Virus record (IMG/VR): IMGVR_UViG_3300037087_000760
Span: 146,984-210,983 of that record
DNA length: 64,000 nucleotides
Direction: 5' to 3' (one strand)
Numbering within the stretch: position 1 is the stretch's first letter; every line of letters begins with the position of its first letter. Made by a program: the position numbers and the translations under genes. Of this stretch, positions 8,327-47,170 are shown in pieces. The notes beneath the pieces were generated by a model. The model was not told where the DNA came from. It was given only the letters and a program-made list of their open reading frames with translations, and did not search any database.

Positions 8327-8458
8327 GAGTGTATTAGTGTAACGAAAGCACAGGCTGTTTGATGTTAGAGTAAGTTTTAGACGGCGGTCTTGGTCATTAG
8401 ATTGACAAAACTGAAATATCGTAGGTCGGATGAGGGTTCAAATCCCTCATACATTCCA
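8327..8458 (+). ncRNA. tRNA-like RNA with an 80-nt domain in place of the anticodon arm
   Basis: (G)AGTGTAT/ATACATT(C) acceptor, GTGT/GCAC D arm, GAGGG-TTCAAAT-CCCTC T arm. Confidence 0.65.
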
Positions 8459-9061: not shown

Positions 9062-9439
9062 ATGGAAGATTTAAAAAAATTAGCGGATGATCTGAGTAAT
9101 CTCACCGTATTAGAGTGTTACCAGTTAGCTAAGATAATGAAAGAAGAATACGGAATAGAATCAAATACAAAAATTGTTGGTGTGAATGTATCACCAGTTC
9201 CAACTAAGGTAGTTGAAATTGAAAAAACAAGTTTTGATGTGATTCTAAAATCAGCAGGAACAACCAACAAACTTGGTGTTATCAAATCCATCAAAGAAAT
9301 GACAGGACAAAGTTTATTGGAAATTAAGAATCTCGTTGATAATGCACCAGCGAAACTAAAAGAAAATGTAAGTAAAGATGAAGCTATGTCTTTACTGAAT
9401 ATTCTGAAAGAATTAGGTGCAGAAATTGAAGTTCTTTGA
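9062..9439 (+). CDS. rplL: Ribosomal protein bL12 (L7/L12)
   Basis: NLTVLE..LAKIMKEEYGI, EKTSFDVIL, KLGVIK, ELGAEIEV. Confidence 0.95.
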   Translation: MEDLKKLADDLSNLTVLECYQLAKIMKEEYGIESNTKIVGVNVSPVPTKVVEIEKTSFDVILKSAGTTNKLGVIKSIKEMTGQSLLEIKNLVDNAPAKLKENVSKDEAMSLLNILKELGAEIEVL

Positions 9440-9450
9440 AAATAATAAAA

Positions 9451-9580
9451 AATGTAGTAGCGAGTTTGAGTGTTACTTCGTAGCTCAACAGTCGAGCATC
9501 AATCAGTTAAATTGAAAGTTGTGGGTGCGATTCCCACCGAACCCGAAAGGGTAATATCACTCAATGATTATCTCTACATT
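9451..9580 (+). ncRNA. tRNA-Asn(GTT) mimic embedded in a long terminal stem (Y-RNA-like)
   Basis: D arm, TCAAT-CAGTTAA-ATTGA anticodon arm and T arm on a 4-bp TTCG/CGAA stem continuing into TTGAGTG/CACTCAA and ATGTAG/CTACAT; no free acceptor end. Confidence 0.7.
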
Positions 9581-9588
9581 TTTTTAAT

Positions 9589-20121: not shown

Positions 20122-21377
20122 ATATAAATATTCAGAATTTCATTCAGTTTAATTTTGGTTTCCTCATTCAGTGATTTCCCCTTATTTTCATTATACAGAA
20201 TCATAAAGGAACTTACCACTTTATTGAATTTGAAACTATCCGTATAACCAAATACAGTTTCCTTAAACTTTTCAATATCAACAGTTTCCTTACCAGTTCT
20301 TGACATCCATTCATCCCATTTTTTGAAGAATCTGATGATACCATTGATGTTCTGGTCTGACCATTGACCACCATCGAAATAATGTCCGATGAACATCAGA
20401 TAAAACCTCAGAACCTTTGGATCATAGTTATCTGGATTAACAATATTTCCTTTACTTTTGGCCATCTTGATTCCATTATTCAGAATCATTCCCTGATGCA
20501 CCACTTTTTTAAAAGGTTCTTCCTCACTGATCATCCCAATATCATACAGGAACATATTAATAAAACGAGCATATATCAGGTGCATGCAAGCGTGTTCACT
20601 TCCCCCGATGTACAGATCAACTTGTTTATATTTATCTTTACTACACAGTTCATTTTCGTTGTACGAATCACAATAACGGATAAAATAGAAACTACTATCT
20701 ACGAAAGTATCCAGAGTATCAGTCTCACCTTCAATTGGAATAGGACATCCCCAACTTCTTTGTCTACTGACACACCAATCATGTTGATTCTCCAGCCAAT
20801 CTCTTTGAGAATTGATTGTTTTCTTTGGGTAATCAATCCAATCCAGATTTTTTATCAGTCGGTCTTTATATTCGGTGATTTTAAAATACCATTGTTCCAT
20901 TTGACGAATTTCAATGGTCGTATTACATCTATCACATTTACCATCTTTGACCTGTTCACGAGCCAGAACAGTTCCACAACTTGGACACCAATTTACTTCA
21001 CCCCAAGCTTTGTAAGCCAGTCCATGTTCTTTCAGTTTGATAAATATCCATTGTGTCCACTTCTGGTAAGATGGATCTGAAGTAATTACTTTTTCTTCAA
21101 AAGAAGTGTCCATTCTTTCCATCTGTTTACGGAAATTCTCAATGTTTTCATAGGTAACTTCTCTGGGATCTCTATTGACTGATTTGGCGTAATTTTCAGC
21201 TGGAAGTCCAAAGGAATCATACCCAAACGGTTGAAAAACTTTAACTCCTTTATATCTTTGGTATCGACAATAACTGTCTACGATAGCGTAATTATAATAA
21301 TGTCCGATGTGCAGTCCGTTTCCGCTCGGATAAGGAAACATGACAACCACCATTTTTTCATTTTTTATGTCGTTCAT
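20118..21377 (-). CDS. leuS: Minimal leucyl-tRNA synthetase (no CP1 editing or C-terminal domain)
   Basis: MFPYPSG.GLHIGH, GYDSFGLPAEN, DWCVSRQRSWG, DTFVDSS, GGSEHA..HL, KMAKSKGN; only 419 aa. Confidence 0.92.
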   Translation of the reverse strand: MNDIKNEKMVVVMFPYPSGNGLHIGHYYNYAIVDSYCRYQRYKGVKVFQPFGYDSFGLPAENYAKSVNRDPREVTYENIENFRKQMERMDTSFEEKVITSDPSYQKWTQWIFIKLKEHGLAYKAWGEVNWCPSCGTVLAREQVKDGKCDRCNTTIEIRQMEQWYFKITEYKDRLIKNLDWIDYPKKTINSQRDWLENQHDWCVSRQRSWGCPIPIEGETDTLDTFVDSSFYFIRYCDSYNENELCSKDKYKQVDLYIGGSEHACMHLIYARFINMFLYDIGMISEEEPFKKVVHQGMILNNGIKMAKSKGNIVNPDNYDPKVLRFYLMFIGHYFDGGQWSDQNINGIIRFFKKWDEWMSRTGKETVDIEKFKETVFGYTDSFKFNKVVSSFMILYNENKGKSLNEETKIKLNEILNIYI

Positions 21378-22137
21378 TGTCTTTTAATTTGTTTGAGAAA
21401 TGTTCAATTGAGATATTATGTTTTTTGATTGTTTTATAAATAAGACTTCTATTACTTTCGTTATATTCCATATTTAAATTTTTCATAATATCTCTATAAG
21501 ATTTTGATTTAGAAATAATCCCTTTAAAAAGATTAATATCATAATCGAAATAATCATAATTTCTTTTATTTGTGAAATCTTTCCAATCATCTTTTTCAAT
21601 TATTTCCTTATCTTCGTATCTAAAATAACACCCACCAGCCGTCCCTTTCAATTGACAACTAAATTTAATTTGTTGTCTAAAAATACCTGTTTCTCTTTCA
21701 GCTCCTCGAAGGCTAATGAATTTTTTTAAAGGAGTAAAATTTTTATCATACATTATAATTGATTTCTTATTTGGATTGGATATTTTCATTAGTTTTTTAC
21801 TTTTATCAGAATGTTTTTTTCCTGTCCAATCTACACCATCTCCACCATCTGTACTATTCTTCAATCTAAATCCCCAGCATTTAAATTGAGAAATCCAATA
21901 TCTTTCTAATGAATCAATATTATTTTTATCACCGATATCAAGTATTTCTATTATTGGTGAAAGATTTTTATTTTTGAGATATTTTAACCATTTATTTTTT
22001 CTTGTCCAAGGTTCTTGACGGATACTCCAATTTGACATATGTCCCCTCAATCTTTTTTCTAAATTTTTGGTCTTACCTACATATTTTATAATTTTATCTT
22101 CTGGGTCTGTTAATGTATAAATATAAAATTCCATCAT
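21358..22137 (-). CDS. GIY-YIG homing endonuclease with NUMOD-like repeats
   Basis: YIYTL..KYVGKT..RL..H, E.YWI, LKNSTDGGDG, KKHS. Confidence 0.88.
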   Translation of the reverse strand: MMEFYIYTLTDPEDKIIKYVGKTKNLEKRLRGHMSNWSIRQEPWTRKNKWLKYLKNKNLSPIIEILDIGDKNNIDSLERYWISQFKCWGFRLKNSTDGGDGVDWTGKKHSDKSKKLMKISNPNKKSIIMYDKNFTPLKKFISLRGAERETGIFRQQIKFSCQLKGTAGGCYFRYEDKEIIEKDDWKDFTNKRNYDYFDYDINLFKGIISKSKSYRDIMKNLNMEYNESNRSLIYKTIKKHNISIEHFSNKLKDNERHKK

Positions 22138-22186
22138 AGATTTTTATTTCTATATATAAAAATTTATGTGTAATGTTTCATAGTTG

Positions 22187-22260
22187 TAACCCCACCCGGA
22201 CTTGAACCGAGATATTTAGTTTCTAAAACTAACGCCGCTAACCAATTAGGCCATGGGGTC
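22187..22260 (-). tRNA. tRNA-Leu(TAG), short variable loop (atypical)
   Basis: 74 nt, TTAGT-TTTAGAA-ACTAA, A73. Confidence 0.85.
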
Positions 22261-22270
22261 ATTATTTTAG

Positions 22271-22344
22271 TAGTTCTGTTCGGACTTGAACCGAAATATT
22301 TGGTTTTTGAAACCAACGCCGCTAACCAATTAGGCCACAGAACC
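22271..22344 (-). tRNA. tRNA-Leu(CAA), short variable loop (atypical)
   Basis: 74 nt, TTGGT-TTCAAAA-ACCAA, A73. Confidence 0.85.
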
Positions 22345-22349
22345 TTTTG

Positions 22350-22434
22350 TATCGATGGTGGGACTCGAACCCACACCCTCGTAATGAGGAACGGCTTCTG
22401 AGGCCGTCGCGTCTACCAATTCCGCCACACCGAC
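22350..22434 (-). tRNA. tRNA-Leu(CAG)
   Basis: Class II cloverleaf. Confidence 0.93.
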
Positions 22435-22486
22435 AAATTTCAAATATTTACCAGTTTTTTGAAAAACTGTTCAAAATTTGATTTTG

Positions 22487-22560
22487 TAGCACCTGTCGGA
22501 TTCGAACCGACAAACTTGGATTTTAAGACCAATATGGTTGCTCTATTACATCAAGGTGCC
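22487..22560 (-). tRNA. tRNA-Leu(TAA), short variable loop (atypical)
   Basis: 74 nt, loop CTTAAAA, A73. Confidence 0.8.
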
Positions 22561-22565
22561 ATTTG

Positions 22566-22649
22566 TAGCCTCTGTGGGAATCGAACCCACACGGTCTTTC
22601 GACCACTGGATTTTGAGTCCAGAGCGTCTACCAATTCCGCCAAGAGGCC
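22566..22649 (-). tRNA. tRNA-Leu(CAA)
   Basis: Class II cloverleaf. Confidence 0.93.
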
Positions 22650-22654
22650 ATTTG

Positions 22655-22739
22655 TGGGAGTTGATGGAGTTGCACCACCCGAGCCCTGAGGACAACAGAT
22701 TTACAGTCTGCCCCGCTACTACTTACGGAATAAACTCCC
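22655..22739 (-). tRNA. tRNA-Tyr(GTA)
   Basis: Class II cloverleaf, loop CTGTAAA. Confidence 0.88.
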
Positions 22740-22743
22740 AAAG

Positions 22744-22828
22744 TGACCAAGGTGGGATTCGAACCCACACGGGCGTAAAGCCCAACGGATTTTAAGTCCG
22801 TCGCGTCTACCAGTTCCGCCACAAGGCC
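22744..22828 (-). tRNA. tRNA-Leu(TAA), two U-U mismatches in acceptor stem
   Basis: Class II cloverleaf. Confidence 0.85.
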
Positions 22829-22836
22829 AATTTCAG

Positions 22837-22918
22837 TGTCCATAGGGGGACTCGAACCCCCACGCCTTTCGACAATAGTTTCTTAGGCTATCGCGTCTAC
22901 CAGTTCCGCCATACGGAC
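22837..22918 (-). tRNA. tRNA-Leu(AAG)
   Basis: Class II cloverleaf, loop CTAAGAA. Confidence 0.88.
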
Positions 22919-22935
22919 AATTTCAAAGAACTCAG

Positions 22936-23007
22936 TGGGAATAGAAGGATTCGAACCTACAAATCACGATTTTACAGACCGCTGAGCGACCACTGCTCAA
23001 TATTCCC
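22936..23007 (-). tRNA. tRNA-Tyr(GTA), short variable loop (atypical)
   Basis: 72 nt, GCGGT-CTGTAAA-ATCGT. Confidence 0.82.
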
Positions 23008-23012
23008 GTTTG

Positions 23013-23085
23013 TGGAAGTACAAGGATTCGAACCTCGAATACACGGTGTTACAAGCCGCTGAGCGACCATCCGCTCACTACTTCC
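23013..23085 (-). tRNA. tRNA-Tyr(GTA), short variable loop (atypical)
   Basis: 73 nt, loop TTGTAAC. Confidence 0.8.
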
Positions 23086-23086
23086 T

Positions 23087-23242
23087 TGGTGGGGGTGGAT
23101 GGAATTTCACACATCGGATGATAAGTTTACAGCTTACGAAGTAACTGTTTTACATCACTACAATTGATTGGCCTTCGATAAAGGAAACAGTCCAATTCAG
23201 AATCCTTATCAATCGAGATACTTTGGTACAGTAATCACCCCC
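23087..23242 (-). ncRNA. tRNA-Tyr(GTA) mimic with D arm replaced by a 100-nt stem
   Basis: GGGGGTG/CACCCCC-A-CCA, TAAG-CTGTAAA-CTTA; shares TGTAGT..GTTACTTCG and TATCTC with 9451-9580. Confidence 0.7.
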
Positions 23243-23274
23243 TTTTATTTTCAATATGTTTAAGAACATGCAAC

Positions 23275-23304
23275 AAAAAACCCATCACTTTTTCAAGGAC
23301 GGGT
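23275..23304 (-). terminator. Intrinsic terminator of Leu/Tyr attenuator
   Basis: ACCCGTC-loop-GATGGGT-TTTTT on - strand; 5' arm also pairs with AGGATGGGTT in leader. Confidence 0.85.
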
Positions 23305-43425: not shown

Positions 43426-45235
43426 AAAATAAAATCAATATATGAAACACATTAAAGAATTTGAATTGAATGAAAATGCAACTCCAGTTGATTCTTTCAG
43501 AAAAGAAATTATGGATGCATATATTTGGATAAGAAAAAACAATAGTACCATTCCAGATGAAGTTTTAGATTTCATGAAAGACGCTGCCATTGAAAAATTA
43601 GATTCTAAAACTAAAGAAAGTATACTTTTGCTTAAATTTAGAACAGAAGATATTTATCATAATAAACACACTTTGGCTGTTAATCAGAGGTCAGATGATT
43701 CAATTGGATATTCATTTTTCTCTGGATGGCAAAGTTCTGGTATGGGTAATGCTTTGAGTAATATGATGATGAAGAAATCTTTACCATCAAGTGTAAAAGG
43801 TTTCTCCAATATAAAACAATTACAAAGTGAAATTCAAAGTTGTATCGATTCTGGTGTTGGTGAGAAGGTAATGAAAGTTGAAGAAATAAATAAGATAAGG
43901 AAATAAATGAAGAATATCCTGACATACAATGAATTTATAAATGAAGATTATCGTGATGTTGTTGGTTGTGGTAGTGGGGGTATACACGCGGATGACCGTC
44001 AACAACCTATTATAGCAAGTGGTAAATATAGTAGTGGAAGTATTACCAGTATTAGTAGTATCGGTGATTGGAACGGAGATAAAAAGGTATTAGGAACAGA
44101 AGAAATAAAGGATGTTAAGAGTGATTATTTTAATCAAAGAAGAAGGAGAAAAAAGAAAGAAACACCAATAGAAGAAGAAAAGAAAAAGAGAATGAGAAGA
44201 AAAGTATATAAAAATTTATTAGCTCTTGATAAAGCGGTAGAAGAAGATAAAGATAATAATATAACAACAAAATTTGCTGATTTTAAAGAGGATAAAATAA
44301 AGAAATTCGACAAGACCAAGGAATTTGATCCCTTATCCGATGATATCATGGTATTTCAAGAACTCGAAGATGGTGAAATTGAAAAAGTTAAAGAACCAGT
44401 AAAAATTTTACAAGTCACTGGAATCATAACTGATCCAGAAAAGATTAAGAAACTTGAATCTGTTAGTGGTGGACCTGTTTTTTCTACCGAATTAAAAGTA
44501 AAATCTGTTAAAAGAGGTGATATAATATGGTTAACAGCCTTATTGGAAAGACCACATGCAACTACATCTTGGAATGCTCAAACAATGGGTGTAATCAAAG
44601 CAAGAGTTGTTGATTACTATTACGGTTTAAATAAATTGAAATATGTATGATTATAAGATTCAAAAAATTTAATGAAAAATTAGATCTTGTTAAAGATGTT
44701 GACAAATTGTTGGAAATATCCAAATGCAAAGCTTTTTATATCATTTTCAATAATAAAACAAAACAAGAAATTAGTATTCCATTAGATTATTGTAGTGGTG
44801 AATATGCCGCACTTCTTAAAGGTTATTCTGTTAAACCATATAAAAAAAGTAATTTGATTCCAATTACTGAAAAGAATGCACTCATGTTAATAGTAGATTG
44901 GGATTATTCATATGAAATAAAATCAGATCTTGCTGATGAAAAACGTAAAATTCTTATTATTCAATACGATTTACCAGATAAATTACCAGAAATGAAAGAG
45001 AATTTATTAAATGAATCTGATACTCAGACATATAGGAAACTCCAATTCATAAGAGAACAAATCAGAAATATAACAAAAACTATTCGTGAAGTTGATTGGA
45101 AAAAAACTACTGACGGTGAGAAAAGTGATATATCTGATTCTTTGGAAAATTTAGTTTCTTTGGTAAAAAATAAAGCCAAATAATTTTTTTATGTTAGAGA
45201 AATATAGTATTTTTGTAGTTCAAATCCCTACCAAC

Positions 45236-47170
45236 ATGGAAAAGTCAGATAGAATCGTGAGTGATTACCCTACATTTCTCAAAGAAGAAGCCCAAAATCA
45301 AGAAGTCGGAATAGGTACTCGATTCTATCATCAGAATGGATGGTGGGTTGTAAAGAGTAAAGGAATTCCTGACCATTGGGGATGTGTAAGCGAAAAGACT
45401 AATGCATTCGTGACCTTTTCTACTCAAGAAATTCTTGATTCTGAAAATCCAGTTGATGACAATCAGGGTAAAGATATAAAATTATTCTATACCGTAGAAA
45501 CAAAGAGGATTGAGATTCCTGTTGGTAGTGATACACACAAAAGTAGTGACGATAAGAAAAAAACATTTGAAAAAATATTCAGAAGAATAGCGAAAGTATC
45601 CAAGTTTATTAAAGTCCCCGAACCCACACTTACTCTTATTGAAAAGAAAAAATATTTCGCCTGTTGTCATCCAAGTGAAAGAGGATTATCATACGACAGG
45701 AAAACCGTTTCAAAGAAAGAAAAACCAGAAGAAACAGATAGGGTGGTGATTGTTTATACAGATATAAACGAAGCCACCGATAGATGTAATTTTCTCAATA
45801 AAGATTCTATTGAAAAACAAAAAAAGTCAAAATTGGGAATGGAAGTTTGGAATGATGATGAAGATAATAAATTGTTTGAACCTTGGAGAGTAGTATCCAA
45901 AGAAGTTGAAGTATATGACCTGAAAATGGCTACCGTCCTTAAACCTGAGGATGAATGGTTAATTTTGGGTACTATTGATCACAAAGACGGACTTTTGAAA
46001 AATGCTCCGGGTCAACAAGTTCCAATTAGTTTAGTTCCTGACCAGATGATAGGTCATTCATATTGTGATCATTGTAAAAGAACCATATACAGAAACAAGA
46101 CTGTTTTTGTTCAGAAAATAAAGACAGGTGAGATCCTCAGGGTTGGGGGTTCATGTATTCGTAACTATTTGGGATATGATTATGAAAAGGTATTATCCTA
46201 TTTAACCGATATTTCATTCCTTGATGAAAGTTACGGTGATTTCGATGGTGGTGGTGATGATTGGGATGAAGGATTTAGTGGTGGTTGGGGTCCAAAATTT
46301 GATGTGGAGATCTCAACTAATGAGGTAATCAAGTATTTCTATTGGTTCTACAAAAAGAATGGATATATGTCCAAAGCAACAGCTGAGAAGATTAATCAAA
46401 AAAGAGACCAAGATTATCTCGCTGACCCTGATCATCCAAAAGAAGAATATTATAATAAAAAAGAAGTTAAATCAACATCAGGTAGAGTACAAGATGATGT
46501 TGATTACGCTCATAACCCCCCTGACAGAAGAAATTATCATGGTAAAAGTTCATCAGAATATCAAGAAGATTTTAATAGATGGTCTGATTTTGTCACAATA
46601 TACAATGAGAGATTAGAAACCACATCCGATGAAGAATTACAATGGGTTATTGATTTCATTCACGCCAATCGTGATAATAACTTCATCTTTAACGCCAGTA
46701 ACATGATTAAGGCCGGTGCCGTTCAGAAACATCTCCTGTATTACATTACAGGTGCTTGTTCTTGGTACTTCGGTAAACTCTCTCAGGAAGATAGGAAAAG
46801 AAGAGAAGCTGAAGAAGCTCTCTCTGGTGGTAAGAAAGAATCAGAATATGTTGGTACAGTTGGAGAAAAATCAAGACTTGAAAATCTTGAAGTGGTTCAT
46901 ATCAGTGGATACCAAACAGAATGGAATTGGTCAAATGTATATAAATTAAAAGACCAGATAGGAAATATTTATACTAAGTTTGGTACTATTGGTTCTCAGT
47001 TCATTGTAAAACCTACTGAACAAGGTAGACAAAAAGACGAACAGGGGAATCTCATTATTAATGATATTTTAGTAGGTGATGTGGTATCAGCTACAGCTGA
47101 AATTAAGAGACATGAGGAATATCAGGGAAAGAAACAAACCACTCTGGGTCGTTTTTCAAAACTTAAATAA
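45236..47170 (+). CDS. Large hypothetical protein with Zn-binding motif and C-terminal OB-like fold
   Basis: CDHC...VGGSC; YVGTVGEK..IKRHEEYQGKKQT; start moved downstream of the promoter at 45208. Confidence 0.55.
   Translation: MEKSDRIVSDYPTFLKEEAQNQEVGIGTRFYHQNGWWVVKSKGIPDHWGCVSEKTNAFVTFSTQEILDSENPVDDNQGKDIKLFYTVETKRIEIPVGSDTHKSSDDKKKTFEKIFRRIAKVSKFIKVPEPTLTLIEKKKYFACCHPSERGLSYDRKTVSKKEKPEETDRVVIVYTDINEATDRCNFLNKDSIEKQKKSKLGMEVWNDDEDNKLFEPWRVVSKEVEVYDLKMATVLKPEDEWLILGTIDHKDGLLKNAPGQQVPISLVPDQMIGHSYCDHCKRTIYRNKTVFVQKIKTGEILRVGGSCIRNYLGYDYEKVLSYLTDISFLDESYGDFDGGGDDWDEGFSGGWGPKFDVEISTNEVIKYFYWFYKKNGYMSKATAEKINQKRDQDYLADPDHPKEEYYNKKEVKSTSGRVQDDVDYAHNPPDRRNYHGKSSSEYQEDFNRWSDFVTIYNERLETTSDEELQWVIDFIHANRDNNFIFNASNMIKAGAVQKHLLYYITGACSWYFGKLSQEDRKRREAEEALSGGKKESEYVGTVGEKSRLENLEVVHISGYQTEWNWSNVYKLKDQIGNIYTKFGTIGSQFIVKPTEQGRQKDEQGNLIINDILVGDVVSATAEIKRHEEYQGKKQTTLGRFSKLK

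What the first reader, a model, noticed from the sequence alone, without database searches (positions are those of the whole stretch)
23087..23242. Permuted counterpart: tRNA-Tyr mimic with the same stem motifs replacing the D arm
Seen: perfect acceptor stem with ACCA and a GTA anticodon loop. The TATCTC motif precedes TGTAGT..GTTACTTCG (reverse order to 9451-9580) inside a 100-nt stem where the D arm should be. It is also the first RNA of its operon. Inference: one protein-binding module grafted onto tRNA bodies in two topologies; this one might be chargeable.
Basis: partly seen in the sequence, partly recalled or inferred. Interest (0 to 1): 0.66.

Follow-up and report, generated by a model that had tools for sequence, protein, structure and literature searches.

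The report
Phage Y RNA on tRNA scaffold
This 156-base phage RNA looks like a tRNA-Tyr whose D arm has been replaced by the conserved stem that phage "Y RNAs" most likely use to bind the Ro60 (TROVE) protein, so it is a circularly permuted, tRNA-ended variant of a known RNA class rather than an ordinary tRNA.

Summary
Window 23242..23087 (minus strand) has a 7-bp acceptor stem plus ACCA and a 5-bp stem with loop CUGUAAA (GUA). An 87-nt arm carrying UAUCUC, GUAGUGA and GUUACUUCG sits where the D arm should be.

These motifs mark a large phage RNA family. I found 152 covariance-model hits in 99 IMG/VR loci, and the two helices covary strongly. A bulged-U helix shows exception-free covariation (A-U 101 / G-C 23; G-C 118 / A-U 6).

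In 41 of 41 loci that hold both, the nearest module lies on the same strand as a TROVE (Ro60) gene, at a median of 166 nt. This genome also has a TROVE gene, with two modules directly upstream. The layout matches published YrlA Y RNAs: a 5'-strand motif, then YUAY, then tRNA-like parts.

This RNA ("element B") carries the module as a closed hairpin inside a D-armless cloverleaf. At least eight analogues exist in other phages, and one shares the same anticodon loop and ACCA. A model trained only on those analogues recovers B exactly (30.2 bits, E 4e-5).

Best reading: a permuted Y RNA and Ro60 partner. Ro60 binding, expression and charging are untested. It is a new variant of a known kind.

The parts
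23087..23242 (-). Whole RNA 'element B' (156 nt): a D-armless tRNA-Tyr-like cloverleaf carrying a hairpin-topology Y-RNA module
   Evidence: Sequence. A family-guided fold gives -35.0 kcal/mol against an MFE of -39.1. Model R3, trained without B, matches exactly these ends (30.2 bits, E 4e-5).
23236..23242 (-). Acceptor stem 5' strand, GGGGGUG (RNA 1-7)
   Evidence: Pairs with RNA 146-152; all 7 are standard pairs.
23228..23235 (-). Linker AUUA (RNA 8-11) and helix P1 5' strand CUGU (RNA 12-15)
   Evidence: Matches the family consensus A-rich..AUA-C before P1. C12-G98 is the near-invariant closing pair (G-C or G-U in 123 of 124 sequences).
23215..23227 (-). J5' strand ACCAAAG-UAUCUC (RNA 16-28); the last three bases form the bulged helix
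   Evidence: Family consensus is NRN-UUUUCYC. C28-G82, U27-A84 and C26-G85 correspond to alignment columns 237-9, 236-11 and 235-12. The first two covary without exception.
   Evidence: 7 standard pairs. In stand-alone family members P2 is the terminal 5'/3' stem, and it covaries strongly.
23149..23161 (-). J3' strand GUAGUGA-UGUAAA (RNA 82-94): the presumed Ro60-contact strand, with bulged U83
   Evidence: Consensus is G95% U93% R G99% Y R A99%. It stands in the same position as the GNCGAA motif of YrlA (PMC4201824).
23137..23148 (-). P1 3' strand ACAG (RNA 95-98) and the invariant UUAC-UUCG (RNA 99-106)
   Evidence: UUAC is 94-100% conserved and UUC 95-100%. It equals the YUAY element of YrlA. 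Exact motif hit at 23137-23145.
23121..23137 (-). Anticodon-like arm GUAAG/CUGUAAA/CUUAU (RNA 106-122); GUA at window 23128-23130
   Evidence: 5 standard pairs and a 7-nt loop with U33 and A37. The loop is identical to that of the neighbouring tRNA-Tyr and of analogue L079.
23098..23120 (-). Variable region CAUCC (RNA 123-127) and T-like arm (RNA 128-145; 5 bp with bulged U132; loop UGAAAUU)
   Evidence: The loop keeps U at position 1 and A at position 5 but lacks the U55-C56 equivalents. Similar loops occur in analogues L298 (UGAAACU) and L079 (UGCAAUU).
23087..23097 (-). Acceptor 3' strand CACCCCC (RNA 146-152) plus A73-CCA (RNA 153-156)
   Evidence: CCA is encoded for only 5 of the 65 tRNAs scored in this genome, against 5 of 11 B-like RNAs.
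23275..23304 (-). Terminator-like hairpin plus U-run of the upstream gene; B starts a new unit after it
   Evidence: Read: ACCCGUC..GAUGGGU then UUUUUU. The scan tool missed it because the loop is 11 nt.
23262..23267 (-). GTTCTT box about 20 nt upstream of G1; recurrent upstream of first modules in other phages
   Evidence: 18 of 126 loci against a 3.9% background, and also present before element A. Its function is unknown.
9449..9582 (+). Element A: the open-ended (canonical Y-RNA topology) counterpart, with a tRNA-Asn-like cap
   Evidence: R1 gives 48.7 bits, E 1.9e-8. Rfam's tRNA model matches 9477-9541 inside it.
22936..23084 (-). Two GUA-anticodon tRNAs directly downstream of B (23084-23015 sub-threshold; 23007-22936 tRNA-Tyr), followed by seven Leu-anticodon tRNAs

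Best explanation
Element B is a phage Y RNA, the non-coding partner of the Ro60/TROVE protein, built in a circularly permuted form on a tRNA-Tyr-like scaffold.

The 87-nt arm in the D-arm position is the family's Ro60-binding module. It consists of helix P1, an internal region containing a conserved bulged-U helix (G-C, bulged U, R-Y, G-C) with the strand GURGYRA, and helix P2. In ordinary members P2 carries the RNA's two ends, and P1 is capped by a small hairpin or a tRNA-like domain. In B, P2 is closed by a loop, and the only ends lie at a tRNA-type acceptor stem with encoded ACCA.

Inferred mechanism:
1. The phage TROVE protein (gene at genome 99.2-100.8 kb) binds the bulged helix.
2. The acceptor/T minihelix lets host RNase P and 3' processing define the ends, and gives a nuclease-resistant fold.
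3. The tRNA-like body, with a genuine-looking anticodon loop and CCA end, presents Ro60 (and whatever Ro60 recruits, for example host PNPase) to factors that recognise tRNA. Alternatively it simply mimics tRNA.

Shown here: the family, its structure, its gene linkage and B's membership. Inferred only: Ro60 binding, processing and function.
For: 1. Family and structure.
- R1 finds 152 copies in 99 loci.
- P1 and P2 are 87% paired against 53% in shuffles. The covariation score is 0.874, against 0.228 in shuffles and 0.11-0.17 with slid partners.
- Two further pairs covary without exception, which defines a bulged-U helix.

2. Linkage to TROVE.
- TROVE genes occur in 63 of 279 pattern-derived loci. 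Among strictly module-positive loci the figure is 41 of 77.
- In those 41 loci the nearest module is on the same strand 41 times out of 41, upstream 33 times out of 41, at a median of 166 nt and within 500 nt in 38.

3. Own genome.
- It has a 539-aa TROVE ORF.
- Two modules lie directly upstream of that ORF on the same strand, and there are 10 modules in all.
- The protein's best match among solved structures is the Ro60 of Thermus phage phiLo (E 7.5e-11). That protein binds phage Y-like RNAs and forms a ternary complex with them and host PNPase (PMC12135203).

4. Same family next to TROVE in named phages.
- Bacillus phage G has at least 4 modules in the gap upstream of gp540, which is 49% identical to our TROVE.
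- crAss-like phage cr111_1 also carries modules before its TROVE gene.

5. Match to published YrlA.
- Both have a conserved 5'-strand motif, then YUAY, then V/T/acceptor/D parts.
- M. smegmatis YrlA is cut by RNase P and gains CCA. That gives ends at the acceptor stem, as B has natively.

6. B itself.
- It carries every near-invariant residue of the family, except an A in place of a 96%-conserved U in J5' (the UAUCUC variant it shares with element A), and it forms all the helices.
- At least eight analogues from other phages form the same D-armless cloverleaf with compensatory acceptor, P1 and T stems.
- R3, trained on those eight alone, finds B full-length at exactly 23087-23242 (30.2 bits, E 4e-5). 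That is above the best plain tRNA in the window, 26.8 bits.
- Of the eleven analogue-bearing records checked besides this genome, four hold TROVE-type genes above the Pfam cut-off (L023, G008, G011, G012) and G010 has a sub-threshold match. The other six have none: five are fragments, and one (G007, 33 kb) is a complete genome.

7. Negative correlate. The relative G001 (288 kb, complete) has neither modules nor TROVE.
Against: - No binding, expression or processing data exist. All 14 runs holding the phage are DNA.
- B lies about 70 kb from the TROVE gene, unlike classical Y RNAs, which lie within 4 kb.
- The conserved strand GURGYRA is not the published GNCGAA or GGUCCGA motif.
- R1 does not detect the loci of Gordonia phage Rabbitrun or Thermus phage phiLo, where YrlA-type RNAs are expected. 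Homology to YrlA therefore rests on architecture and gene linkage, not on sequence.
- Some module-bearing records lack a TROVE gene, including one complete 33-kb genome. They would have to use a host Ro60.
- B has no ortholog with sequence variation, so its own helices are supported only by analogy.
- The hairpin-only model R2 hit B weakly and out of register because P2 is long (20.4 bits).
- The family-guided fold is 4 kcal/mol above the MFE.
Confidence: 0.72

Rival explanations
1. The module is real but is not a Ro60 ligand. It would be a tRNA-array element with another job, such as a processing, stability or antitermination signal, or a site for a different protein. TROVE genes would then merely share its neighbourhood.
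For: Modules sit at the heads of tRNA arrays and inside tRNAs. Four of five hairpin-bearing records checked showed no TROVE gene, including a complete 33-kb genome. The sequence motif differs from published Ro sites. A recurrent GTTCTT box upstream hints at a transcription-linked role.
Against: Same-strand linkage is 41 of 41 at a median of 166 nt. In phage G, 4-5 modules fill the gap before the TROVE gene, with the nearest tRNAs about 3 kb away. A relative lacking TROVE also lacks modules. A bulged helix with a conserved 5' strand near the RNA ends is the defining design of Y RNAs.
Confidence: 0.12
2. B is a working tRNA-Tyr that is charged and used on the ribosome, and it merely carries an extra arm. 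In that reading Ro60 binding, if any, regulates or protects a decoding tRNA.
For: B has G1-C72, A73 and an encoded CCA, and CCA is encoded for only 5 of the 65 tRNAs scored in this genome. Its loop CUGUAAA is identical to that of the adjacent tRNA-Tyr. Seven of the nine full-length B-like RNAs (B plus eight analogues) keep a 7-nt loop with U33 and R37, with varied anticodons. Three complete tRNAs in this genome carry the same module between nt 26 and 27.
Against: There is no D arm, and the T loop lacks the elbow-forming U55-C56 equivalents. Two GUA tRNAs without the arm lie immediately downstream, so B is redundant for decoding. An 87-nt arm at the elbow side is unprecedented for a ribosomal substrate. 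No phage TyrRS was found.
Confidence: 0.09
3. The arm is an intron-like insert that is cut out, leaving a small tRNA.
For: In the three module-bearing complete tRNAs, removing the insert between nt 26 and 27 would restore a canonical tRNA.
Against: For B, excision would leave a 60-70-nt RNA with no D arm at all. The module is most often a free-standing RNA with its own ends (129 of 154 regex-verified copies). No bulge-helix-bulge structure or group I features are present, there are no Rfam ribozyme hits, and this genome has no RtcB.
Confidence: 0.05
4. B is a decayed tRNA pseudogene that shares motifs with element A by chance.
For: tRNA finders do not call it, and no ortholog with sequence variation is available.
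Against: All of about 25 near-invariant family positions but one (col 233, A for U; the UAUCUC variant) are present, and all helices form. An independent model recovers its exact ends. An analogue in an unrelated contig has the same design, anticodon loop and ACCA.
Confidence: 0.02

Closest known systems
YrlA / YrlB bacterial and phage Y RNAs (Chen et al. 2014, PMC4201824; structure preprint 10.1101/312249)
   Same: - Partner of Ro60/TROVE, usually encoded just upstream on the same strand.
- A helix carrying a conserved 5'-strand motif, followed by YUAY (here UUAC).
- Fusion to tRNA-like parts.
- M. smegmatis YrlA is cut by RNase P and gains CCA, so a Y RNA with acceptor-stem ends already has a precedent.
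   Different: - B is one continuous chain whose only ends are at the acceptor stem, and the Ro-type stem is closed by a loop, so it is a circular permutation.
- B keeps an anticodon arm, which YrlA lacks, and has no D arm, which YrlA has.
- The conserved strand is GURGYRA with a bulged U, not GNCGAA.
- My family model does not detect the actinophage locus tested.
- B lies 70 kb from the TROVE gene.
Yrl1/Yrl2 and phiRo60 of Thermus phage phiLo (PMC12135203; PDB 9KOP, 9L5Y)
   Same: A phage-encoded Ro60, which is the closest solved relative of this phage's TROVE protein. Y-like RNAs lie upstream of the gene, and binding to them has been shown experimentally. It also forms a complex with host PNPase.
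   Different: Those RNAs are simple stem-bulge-stem forms with a CGAA motif. No tRNA body, anticodon loop or CCA end is described, and R1 does not match them.
D. radiodurans Yrn1
   Same: A Y RNA with tRNA-like features, including an anticodon-arm-like stem-loop. It tethers Ro60 to PNPase.
   Different: Its ends are at the Ro-binding stem, it has no acceptor stem with CCA, and its sequence motif differs.
tmRNA tRNA-like domain
   Same: An acceptor/T minihelix with CCA, with a reduced D region replaced by other structure. It is a non-canonical RNA that is charged.
   Different: B has no G3-U70, no tag reading frame and no pseudoknots. ARAGORN and Rfam do not call it. B also has an anticodon loop.
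D-armless mitochondrial tRNAs
   Same: Cloverleaf without a D arm, and a T loop freed from elbow contacts.
   Different: Those simply lack the arm. B replaces it with an 87-nt conserved module of a protein-linked RNA family.

Membership tests
Y RNA / YrlA (Ro60-associated ncRNA) | Encoded within a few kb of a Ro60/TROVE gene, on the same strand (family level) | tested here: met
   In 41 of 41 loci the nearest module is on the same strand; 38 of 41 lie within 500 nt, median 166 nt. The same holds in this genome, Bacillus phage G and cr111_1.
Y RNA / YrlA (Ro60-associated ncRNA) | The same gene linkage for element B itself | tested here: not met
   B is at genome 170.07-170.23 kb and the TROVE ORF is at 99.2-100.8 kb. 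The two share a genome but are not adjacent.
Y RNA / YrlA (Ro60-associated ncRNA) | Conserved Ro-contact motif on the 5' strand of a bulged helix (GGUCCGA in animals; GNCGAAN0-1G in YrlA) | tested here: inconclusive
   A bulged helix with a conserved 5' strand is present and covaries, but the sequence is GURGYRA. R1 misses the Gordonia-phage and phiLo loci.
Y RNA / YrlA (Ro60-associated ncRNA) | Conserved YUAY directly after the stem | tested here: met
   UUAC is 94-100% conserved in the 124 distinct family sequences and is present in B at RNA 99-102.
Y RNA / YrlA (Ro60-associated ncRNA) | tRNA-like domain in the order V-T-closed acceptor stem-D, with RNA ends at the Ro stem | tested here: not met
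   B has an open acceptor stem with ACCA, no D arm, an anticodon arm, and a loop-closed P2. Some other family members do meet this (L032, L039, L068), whereas element A's tRNA-like cap runs in the ordinary D-anticodon-T order.
Y RNA / YrlA (Ro60-associated ncRNA) | Physically bound by Ro60 | not testable with these tools
   No RNA-protein binding or RNA-seq data exist; only DNA runs hold the phage.
Phage Y-module family defined here (models R1-R3) | Near-invariant residues, plus P1, the bulged helix and P2 | tested here: met
   All near-invariant residues but one (A for U at col 233, the UAUCUC variant) are present, and every proposed pair is a standard pair.
Phage Y-module family defined here (models R1-R3) | Recognised by a model trained without it | tested here: met
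   R3 (eight analogues from other phages) matches 23087-23242 minus strand, full length, 30.2 bits, E 4e-5. R2 gives only 20.4 bits and is out of register.
Canonical tRNA (Rfam RF00005, ARAGORN) | Detected by tRNA models; D arm with G18-G19 contacting T-loop U55-C56 | tested here: not met
   No call. B has no D arm, and its T loop is UGAAAUU.
Canonical tRNA (Rfam RF00005, ARAGORN) | 7-bp acceptor stem, discriminator plus CCA, and a 5-bp anticodon stem with a 7-nt loop carrying U33 and R37 | tested here: met
tmRNA | G3-U70, tag ORF, pseudoknots, detection by ARAGORN or Rfam | tested here: not met
   Position 3-70 is G3-C150, and there is no call.
tRNA intron (archaeal BHB type or group I) | A splice motif, and an excision product that is a complete tRNA | tested here: not met
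   No bulge-helix-bulge structure and no Rfam intron or ribozyme hit. Excision would leave no D arm. Actual splicing could not be tested because no RNA runs exist.

The most novel reading that the evidence does not exclude
B-like RNAs are genuine adaptor hybrids. They would be matured like tRNAs, aminoacylated (B with tyrosine) and bound by Ro60 at the same time. The phage could then couple a Ro60 ribonucleoprotein to the charging, EF-Tu or ribosome machinery. Alternatively it could use Ro60 binding to gate or protect a subset of its tRNAs, including the three complete tRNAs that carry the module at nt 26/27, for instance against host tRNA-cleaving defences.
Probability: 0.12. Interest if true: 0.85.

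Novelty: new variant of a known kind. Interest (0 to 1): 0.6.

Why it matters
Y RNAs and Ro60 are conserved from bacteria to humans, yet what the variable end of a Y RNA does is still unclear. These phage RNAs show one Ro-type module joined to tRNA parts in every possible way:
- as a free RNA;
- capped by a tRNA-like domain;
- inserted into complete tRNAs;
- replacing the D arm of a CCA-ended cloverleaf.

That has four consequences.
1. It gives natural intermediates for the proposed origin of Y RNAs from tRNAs.
2. It predicts that Ro60 particles in phages work on or with the tRNA machinery.
3. It shows that some 'tRNA genes' annotated in phage genomes are parts of Y RNAs. An example is the tRNA-Gln of crAss-like phage cr111_1.
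4. It offers cultured systems, Bacillus phage G and crAss-like phages, where this can be tested.

Tried and rejected
- tmRNA: rejected. There is no G3-U70 and no ARAGORN or Rfam call.
- Known small ribozymes, riboswitches and Rfam families: nothing matched, even at E up to 10.
- Kink-turn or box C/D, hairpin, hammerhead and HDV-like folds: considered from memory and dropped. The conserved strands do not fit, and the topology is a simple nested rod.
- Intron or permuted-tRNA splicing: my working idea. It was dropped once the TROVE linkage appeared, because most copies are free-standing and excision from B gives no tRNA.
- MITE or DNA-level repeat: rejected because of GNRA-capped helices and base-pair covariation.
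- BLAST of the region against GenBank phages: no hit.
- Exact motif in the 630-735-kb relatives LR756501, LR745206 and LR756502: no enrichment over the control.
- The two first IMG/VR pattern scans were dominated by chance hits, with hundreds expected from the size of the collection. Only loci with verified helices or several copies were used.
- B orthologs sought by neighbouring proteins and by DNA: none found. Population variants in peat runs: none in B. So B itself yields no covariation.
- RNA evidence: no RNA run holds the phage.
- RtcB and TyrRS genes in this genome: none found, though the record is only 71% complete.
- The hairpin-only model R2 mis-registered B because of its long P2.
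- Not used: the large protein searches, structure prediction and complex prediction. No alternative genetic code was invoked.

Full report
**What is there.** On the minus strand, window 23242..23087 encodes a 156-nt RNA. RNA position i corresponds to window position 23243 - i.
- Positions 1-7 (GGGGGUG) pair perfectly with 146-152 (CACCCCC) and are followed by ACCA.
- Positions 106-122 form a 5-bp stem with the loop CUGUAAA, which has U33, GUA and A37.
- Positions 128-145 form a 5-bp T-like stem with one bulged U and the loop UGAAAUU.
- There is no D arm. Between the acceptor stem and the anticodon arm lies an 87-nt arm (12-98) carrying UAUCUC, GUAGUGA and GUUACUUCG.
- Element A (window 9449-9582, plus strand) carries the same three motifs in the opposite order, and they flank a tRNA-Asn-like core.
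- ARAGORN and Rfam do not call B.
- Independent peat-metagenome contigs cover B with no differences, so it is not an assembly artefact.

**The motifs are not a coincidence between two elements.** The window is part of a 210,983-bp IMG/VR virus record with 67 ARAGORN tRNAs.
- GTTACTTCG occurs 7 times in that genome, each at or within 1 kb of the head of a tRNA array.
- Three of these copies sit inside otherwise complete tRNAs, between the D stem (nt 26) and the anticodon stem (nt 27), as a hairpin whose tip is often a GNRA loop.
- Two copies are short free-standing RNAs. One is element A and one is B.

Pattern scans of IMG/VR then recovered many loci with several copies inside tRNA arrays. Chance hits were expected to dominate the single-copy matches, so I kept only copies with verified helices.

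**Structure of the module.** A covariance model of the short free-standing form (R1) finds 152 copies at E <= 0.001 in 99 loci.
- On the 124 distinct sequences the two helices are 87% paired, against 53% in shuffles.
- The covariation score is 0.874, against 0.228 in shuffles and 0.11-0.17 when the partners are slid. The MAFFT-only seed gives the same picture.
- The consensus is: P2 strand - G U R G Y R A - NN - P1 strand ending in G - UUAC UUCG - variable cap - A-rich - C + P1 strand - NRN UUUUCYC - P2 strand.
- Two further pairs covary without a single exception. Column 9 with 237 is G-C 118 times and A-U 6 times. Column 11 with 236 is A-U 101 times and G-C 23 times. The U between them is left bulged.

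The core is therefore a bulged helix with a highly conserved 5' strand, placed next to the RNA's paired ends.

**Which protein.** I clustered the ORFs of the module-bearing loci, and the commonest neighbour was a TROVE-domain (Ro60) protein.
- With a profile of that cluster, TROVE genes occur in 63 of 279 pattern-derived loci, and in 41 of 77 strictly module-positive loci.
- In those 41 loci the nearest module is always on the same strand as the gene. It is upstream in 33, the median distance is 166 nt, and 38 lie within 500 nt.
- This genome encodes a 539-aa TROVE protein, and R1 finds two modules directly upstream of it on the same strand.
- Its closest solved relative is the Ro60 of Thermus phage phiLo. 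That protein was shown to bind phage Y-like RNAs and to form a ternary complex with them and host PNPase (PMC12135203).
- Its closest cultured relative is gp540 of Bacillus phage G, at 49% identity. The 1-kb gap upstream of gp540 holds at least four modules.
- A crAss-like phage, cr111_1, has two modules before its TROVE gene, and one of them encloses the annotated tRNA-Gln.
- A 288-kb relative without TROVE has no modules.

**Agreement with published Y RNAs.** Chen et al. 2014 (PMC4201824) describe YrlA as follows:
- a 5' motif thought to contact Ro60;
- then a conserved YUAY;
- then variable, T, closed acceptor and D elements;
- then the 3' strand of the stem;
- encoded within 4 kb of the Ro60 gene, on the same strand.

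The present family has the same order, and UUAC is its YUAY. Many members carry 'permuted' tRNA parts of exactly that kind. M. smegmatis YrlA is cut by RNase P in its acceptor-like stem and receives CCA.

The sequence of the conserved strand differs (GURGYRA against GNCGAA), and R1 does not detect the Gordonia-phage or phiLo loci. I therefore treat this as a distinct lineage of the Y-RNA kind, not as a proven homolog.

**Where B fits.** B carries every near-invariant residue of the module, except an A in place of a 96%-conserved U in J5' (the UAUCUC variant it shares with element A), and forms all of its helices:
- P1: 12-15 with 95-98;
- bulged helix: C28-G82, bulged U83, U27-A84, C26-G85;
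- P2: 29-35 with 75-81.

Its P2 is closed by a loop, and P1 opens into a cloverleaf junction together with the acceptor, anticodon and T arms. This fold costs 4 kcal/mol more than the MFE. The MFE instead pairs parts of the module with the anticodon region.

B is not unique. Hairpin-topology modules occur in complete tRNAs of unrelated phages (L266, L287, L118/L301/L074, L169). D-armless, B-like RNAs occur in at least eight other contigs.
- Four of them fold into the same cloverleaf without any constraint.
- Their acceptor, P1 and T stems differ by compensatory changes.
- L079:6668-6787 is the closest analogue. It has GGGGGAG/CUCCCCC, encoded ACCA, the identical loop CUGUAAA and a similarly non-canonical T loop.
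- A model built only from those eight (R3) recovers B at exactly 23087-23242, full length, with 30.2 bits and E 4e-5. The best ordinary tRNA in the window scores 26.8 bits.
- R3 also picks out the three module-bearing tRNAs of this genome at 50-58 bits.
- Of eleven analogue-bearing records checked, four hold TROVE genes above the Pfam cut-off (L023, G008, G011, G012). G010 has a sub-threshold match, and the other six have none; five of those are fragments and G007 is a complete 33-kb genome.

**Is it a tRNA?** It is not a canonical one. The D arm is missing, and the T loop lacks the residues that build the elbow. Yet several features look selected.
- CCA is encoded in B and in 5 of 11 B-like RNAs. 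It is encoded for only 5 of the 65 tRNAs scored in this genome, and for neither of the two GUA tRNAs next to B.
- Seven of the nine full-length B-like RNAs keep a 7-nt loop with U33 and a purine at 37, with varied anticodons.

One reasonable inference is that a weakened elbow makes CCA addition inefficient, so a needed CCA end is hard-wired. Whether that end is charged, or only protects the RNA, cannot be decided here. No phage TyrRS or RtcB was found in the 71%-complete record.

**Conclusion.** B is best explained as a circularly permuted Y RNA on a tRNA-Tyr-like scaffold, a presumptive partner of the phage Ro60 protein (confidence 0.72). The rivals are:
- a Ro60-independent role for the module (0.12);
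- a truly decoding tRNA with an extra arm (0.09);
- an excised insert (0.05);
- a pseudogene (0.02).

The chargeability idea remains open. No RNA-level data exist for this peat phage, so expression, ends, binding and charging all need experiments, and Bacillus phage G offers a cultured entry point.

Noticed in passing
window 9062-9439 (+): Phage-encoded ribosomal protein bL12 (Pfam PF00542 at 1e-20, plus the N-terminal dimerisation domain). Y-RNA element A starts about 10 nt after its stop codon, and that stop codon lies inside a GTTCTTTGA box.
   Followed up: partly
window 22186-23007 (-) and the whole genome: The tRNA set is odd. There are 67 tRNAs grouped by amino acid. Normal class-II Leu tRNAs (83-86 nt, 55-59% GC) sit beside 75-nt class-I-shaped tRNAs with Leu anticodons (44-48% GC). 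The Tyr tRNAs lack the long variable arm. Many 83-92-nt versions of class-I tRNAs are present.
   Followed up: partly
window 8328-8456 (+); L004:1297-1424 (genome 89296-89423): Two further tRNA-model hits of about 129 nt carry roughly 55-nt inserts that are not the Y module. One insert lies in the anticodon-loop region. Their nature is unknown.
   Followed up: no
L004:937-1065, L004:1550-1679, L002:4353-4486 (-): Three otherwise complete tRNAs of this genome (Arg-UCU, a UAA-anticodon tRNA and Arg-CCU) carry the Y module as a hairpin exactly between nt 26 and 27. Removing it would restore canonical tRNAs.
   Followed up: partly
L004:10615-10879 (genome 98614-98878), just before the TROVE ORF at L252:808-2427: Two modules of a GAAGCGG subtype lie directly upstream of the TROVE gene. 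Bacillus phage G has the same subtype.
   Followed up: yes
L317:4254-4759 (Bacillus phage G, NC_023719, about 406.7-407.2 kb): At least four tandem Y modules lie in the unannotated 1-kb gap upstream of gp540 (TROVE). This is a cultured system for experiments.
   Followed up: partly
L319:1713-1848 and 2082-2155 (crAss-like phage cr111_1, NC_055880): The annotated tRNA-Gln lies inside a Y module, and a second module and then the TROVE gene follow. Some annotated phage tRNAs may therefore be Y-RNA domains.
   Followed up: partly
window 23262-23267 (-) and upstream of modules in 18 of 126 loci: A GTTCTT(T/A)RA box lies 10-35 nt upstream of the first module, against a 3.9% background. It may be a promoter, start or processing signal.
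   Followed up: partly
L286:3871-4001, L114:2072-2203, L060:2045-2185: In some B-like RNAs a 4-bp GUUU/AAAC helix encloses the module. There the D stem is kept and only the D loop is replaced.
   Followed up: no
L023:1414-1513 (+): A 100-nt mini version: an 8-bp acceptor stem with GCCA, the module and one small hairpin, with no anticodon or T arm. It lies about 250 nt downstream of a TROVE gene.
   Followed up: partly
L312-L316 (bacterial MAG contigs): Exact short-form pattern hits occur in only five genome contigs, from Saprospiraceae, other Bacteroidota and a Patescibacteria MAG. This hints at Bacteroidota hosts, or at phage contigs binned into MAGs.
   Followed up: no
window 45189-45239 (-): A weak R1 hit (18.9 bits, E 0.1), probably chance.
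   Followed up: no
window 21358-22137 (-); L087, L079 and L252:2482-3204: GIY-YIG and NUMOD3 homing-endonuclease-like genes recur beside the tRNA and Y-RNA arrays.
   Followed up: no
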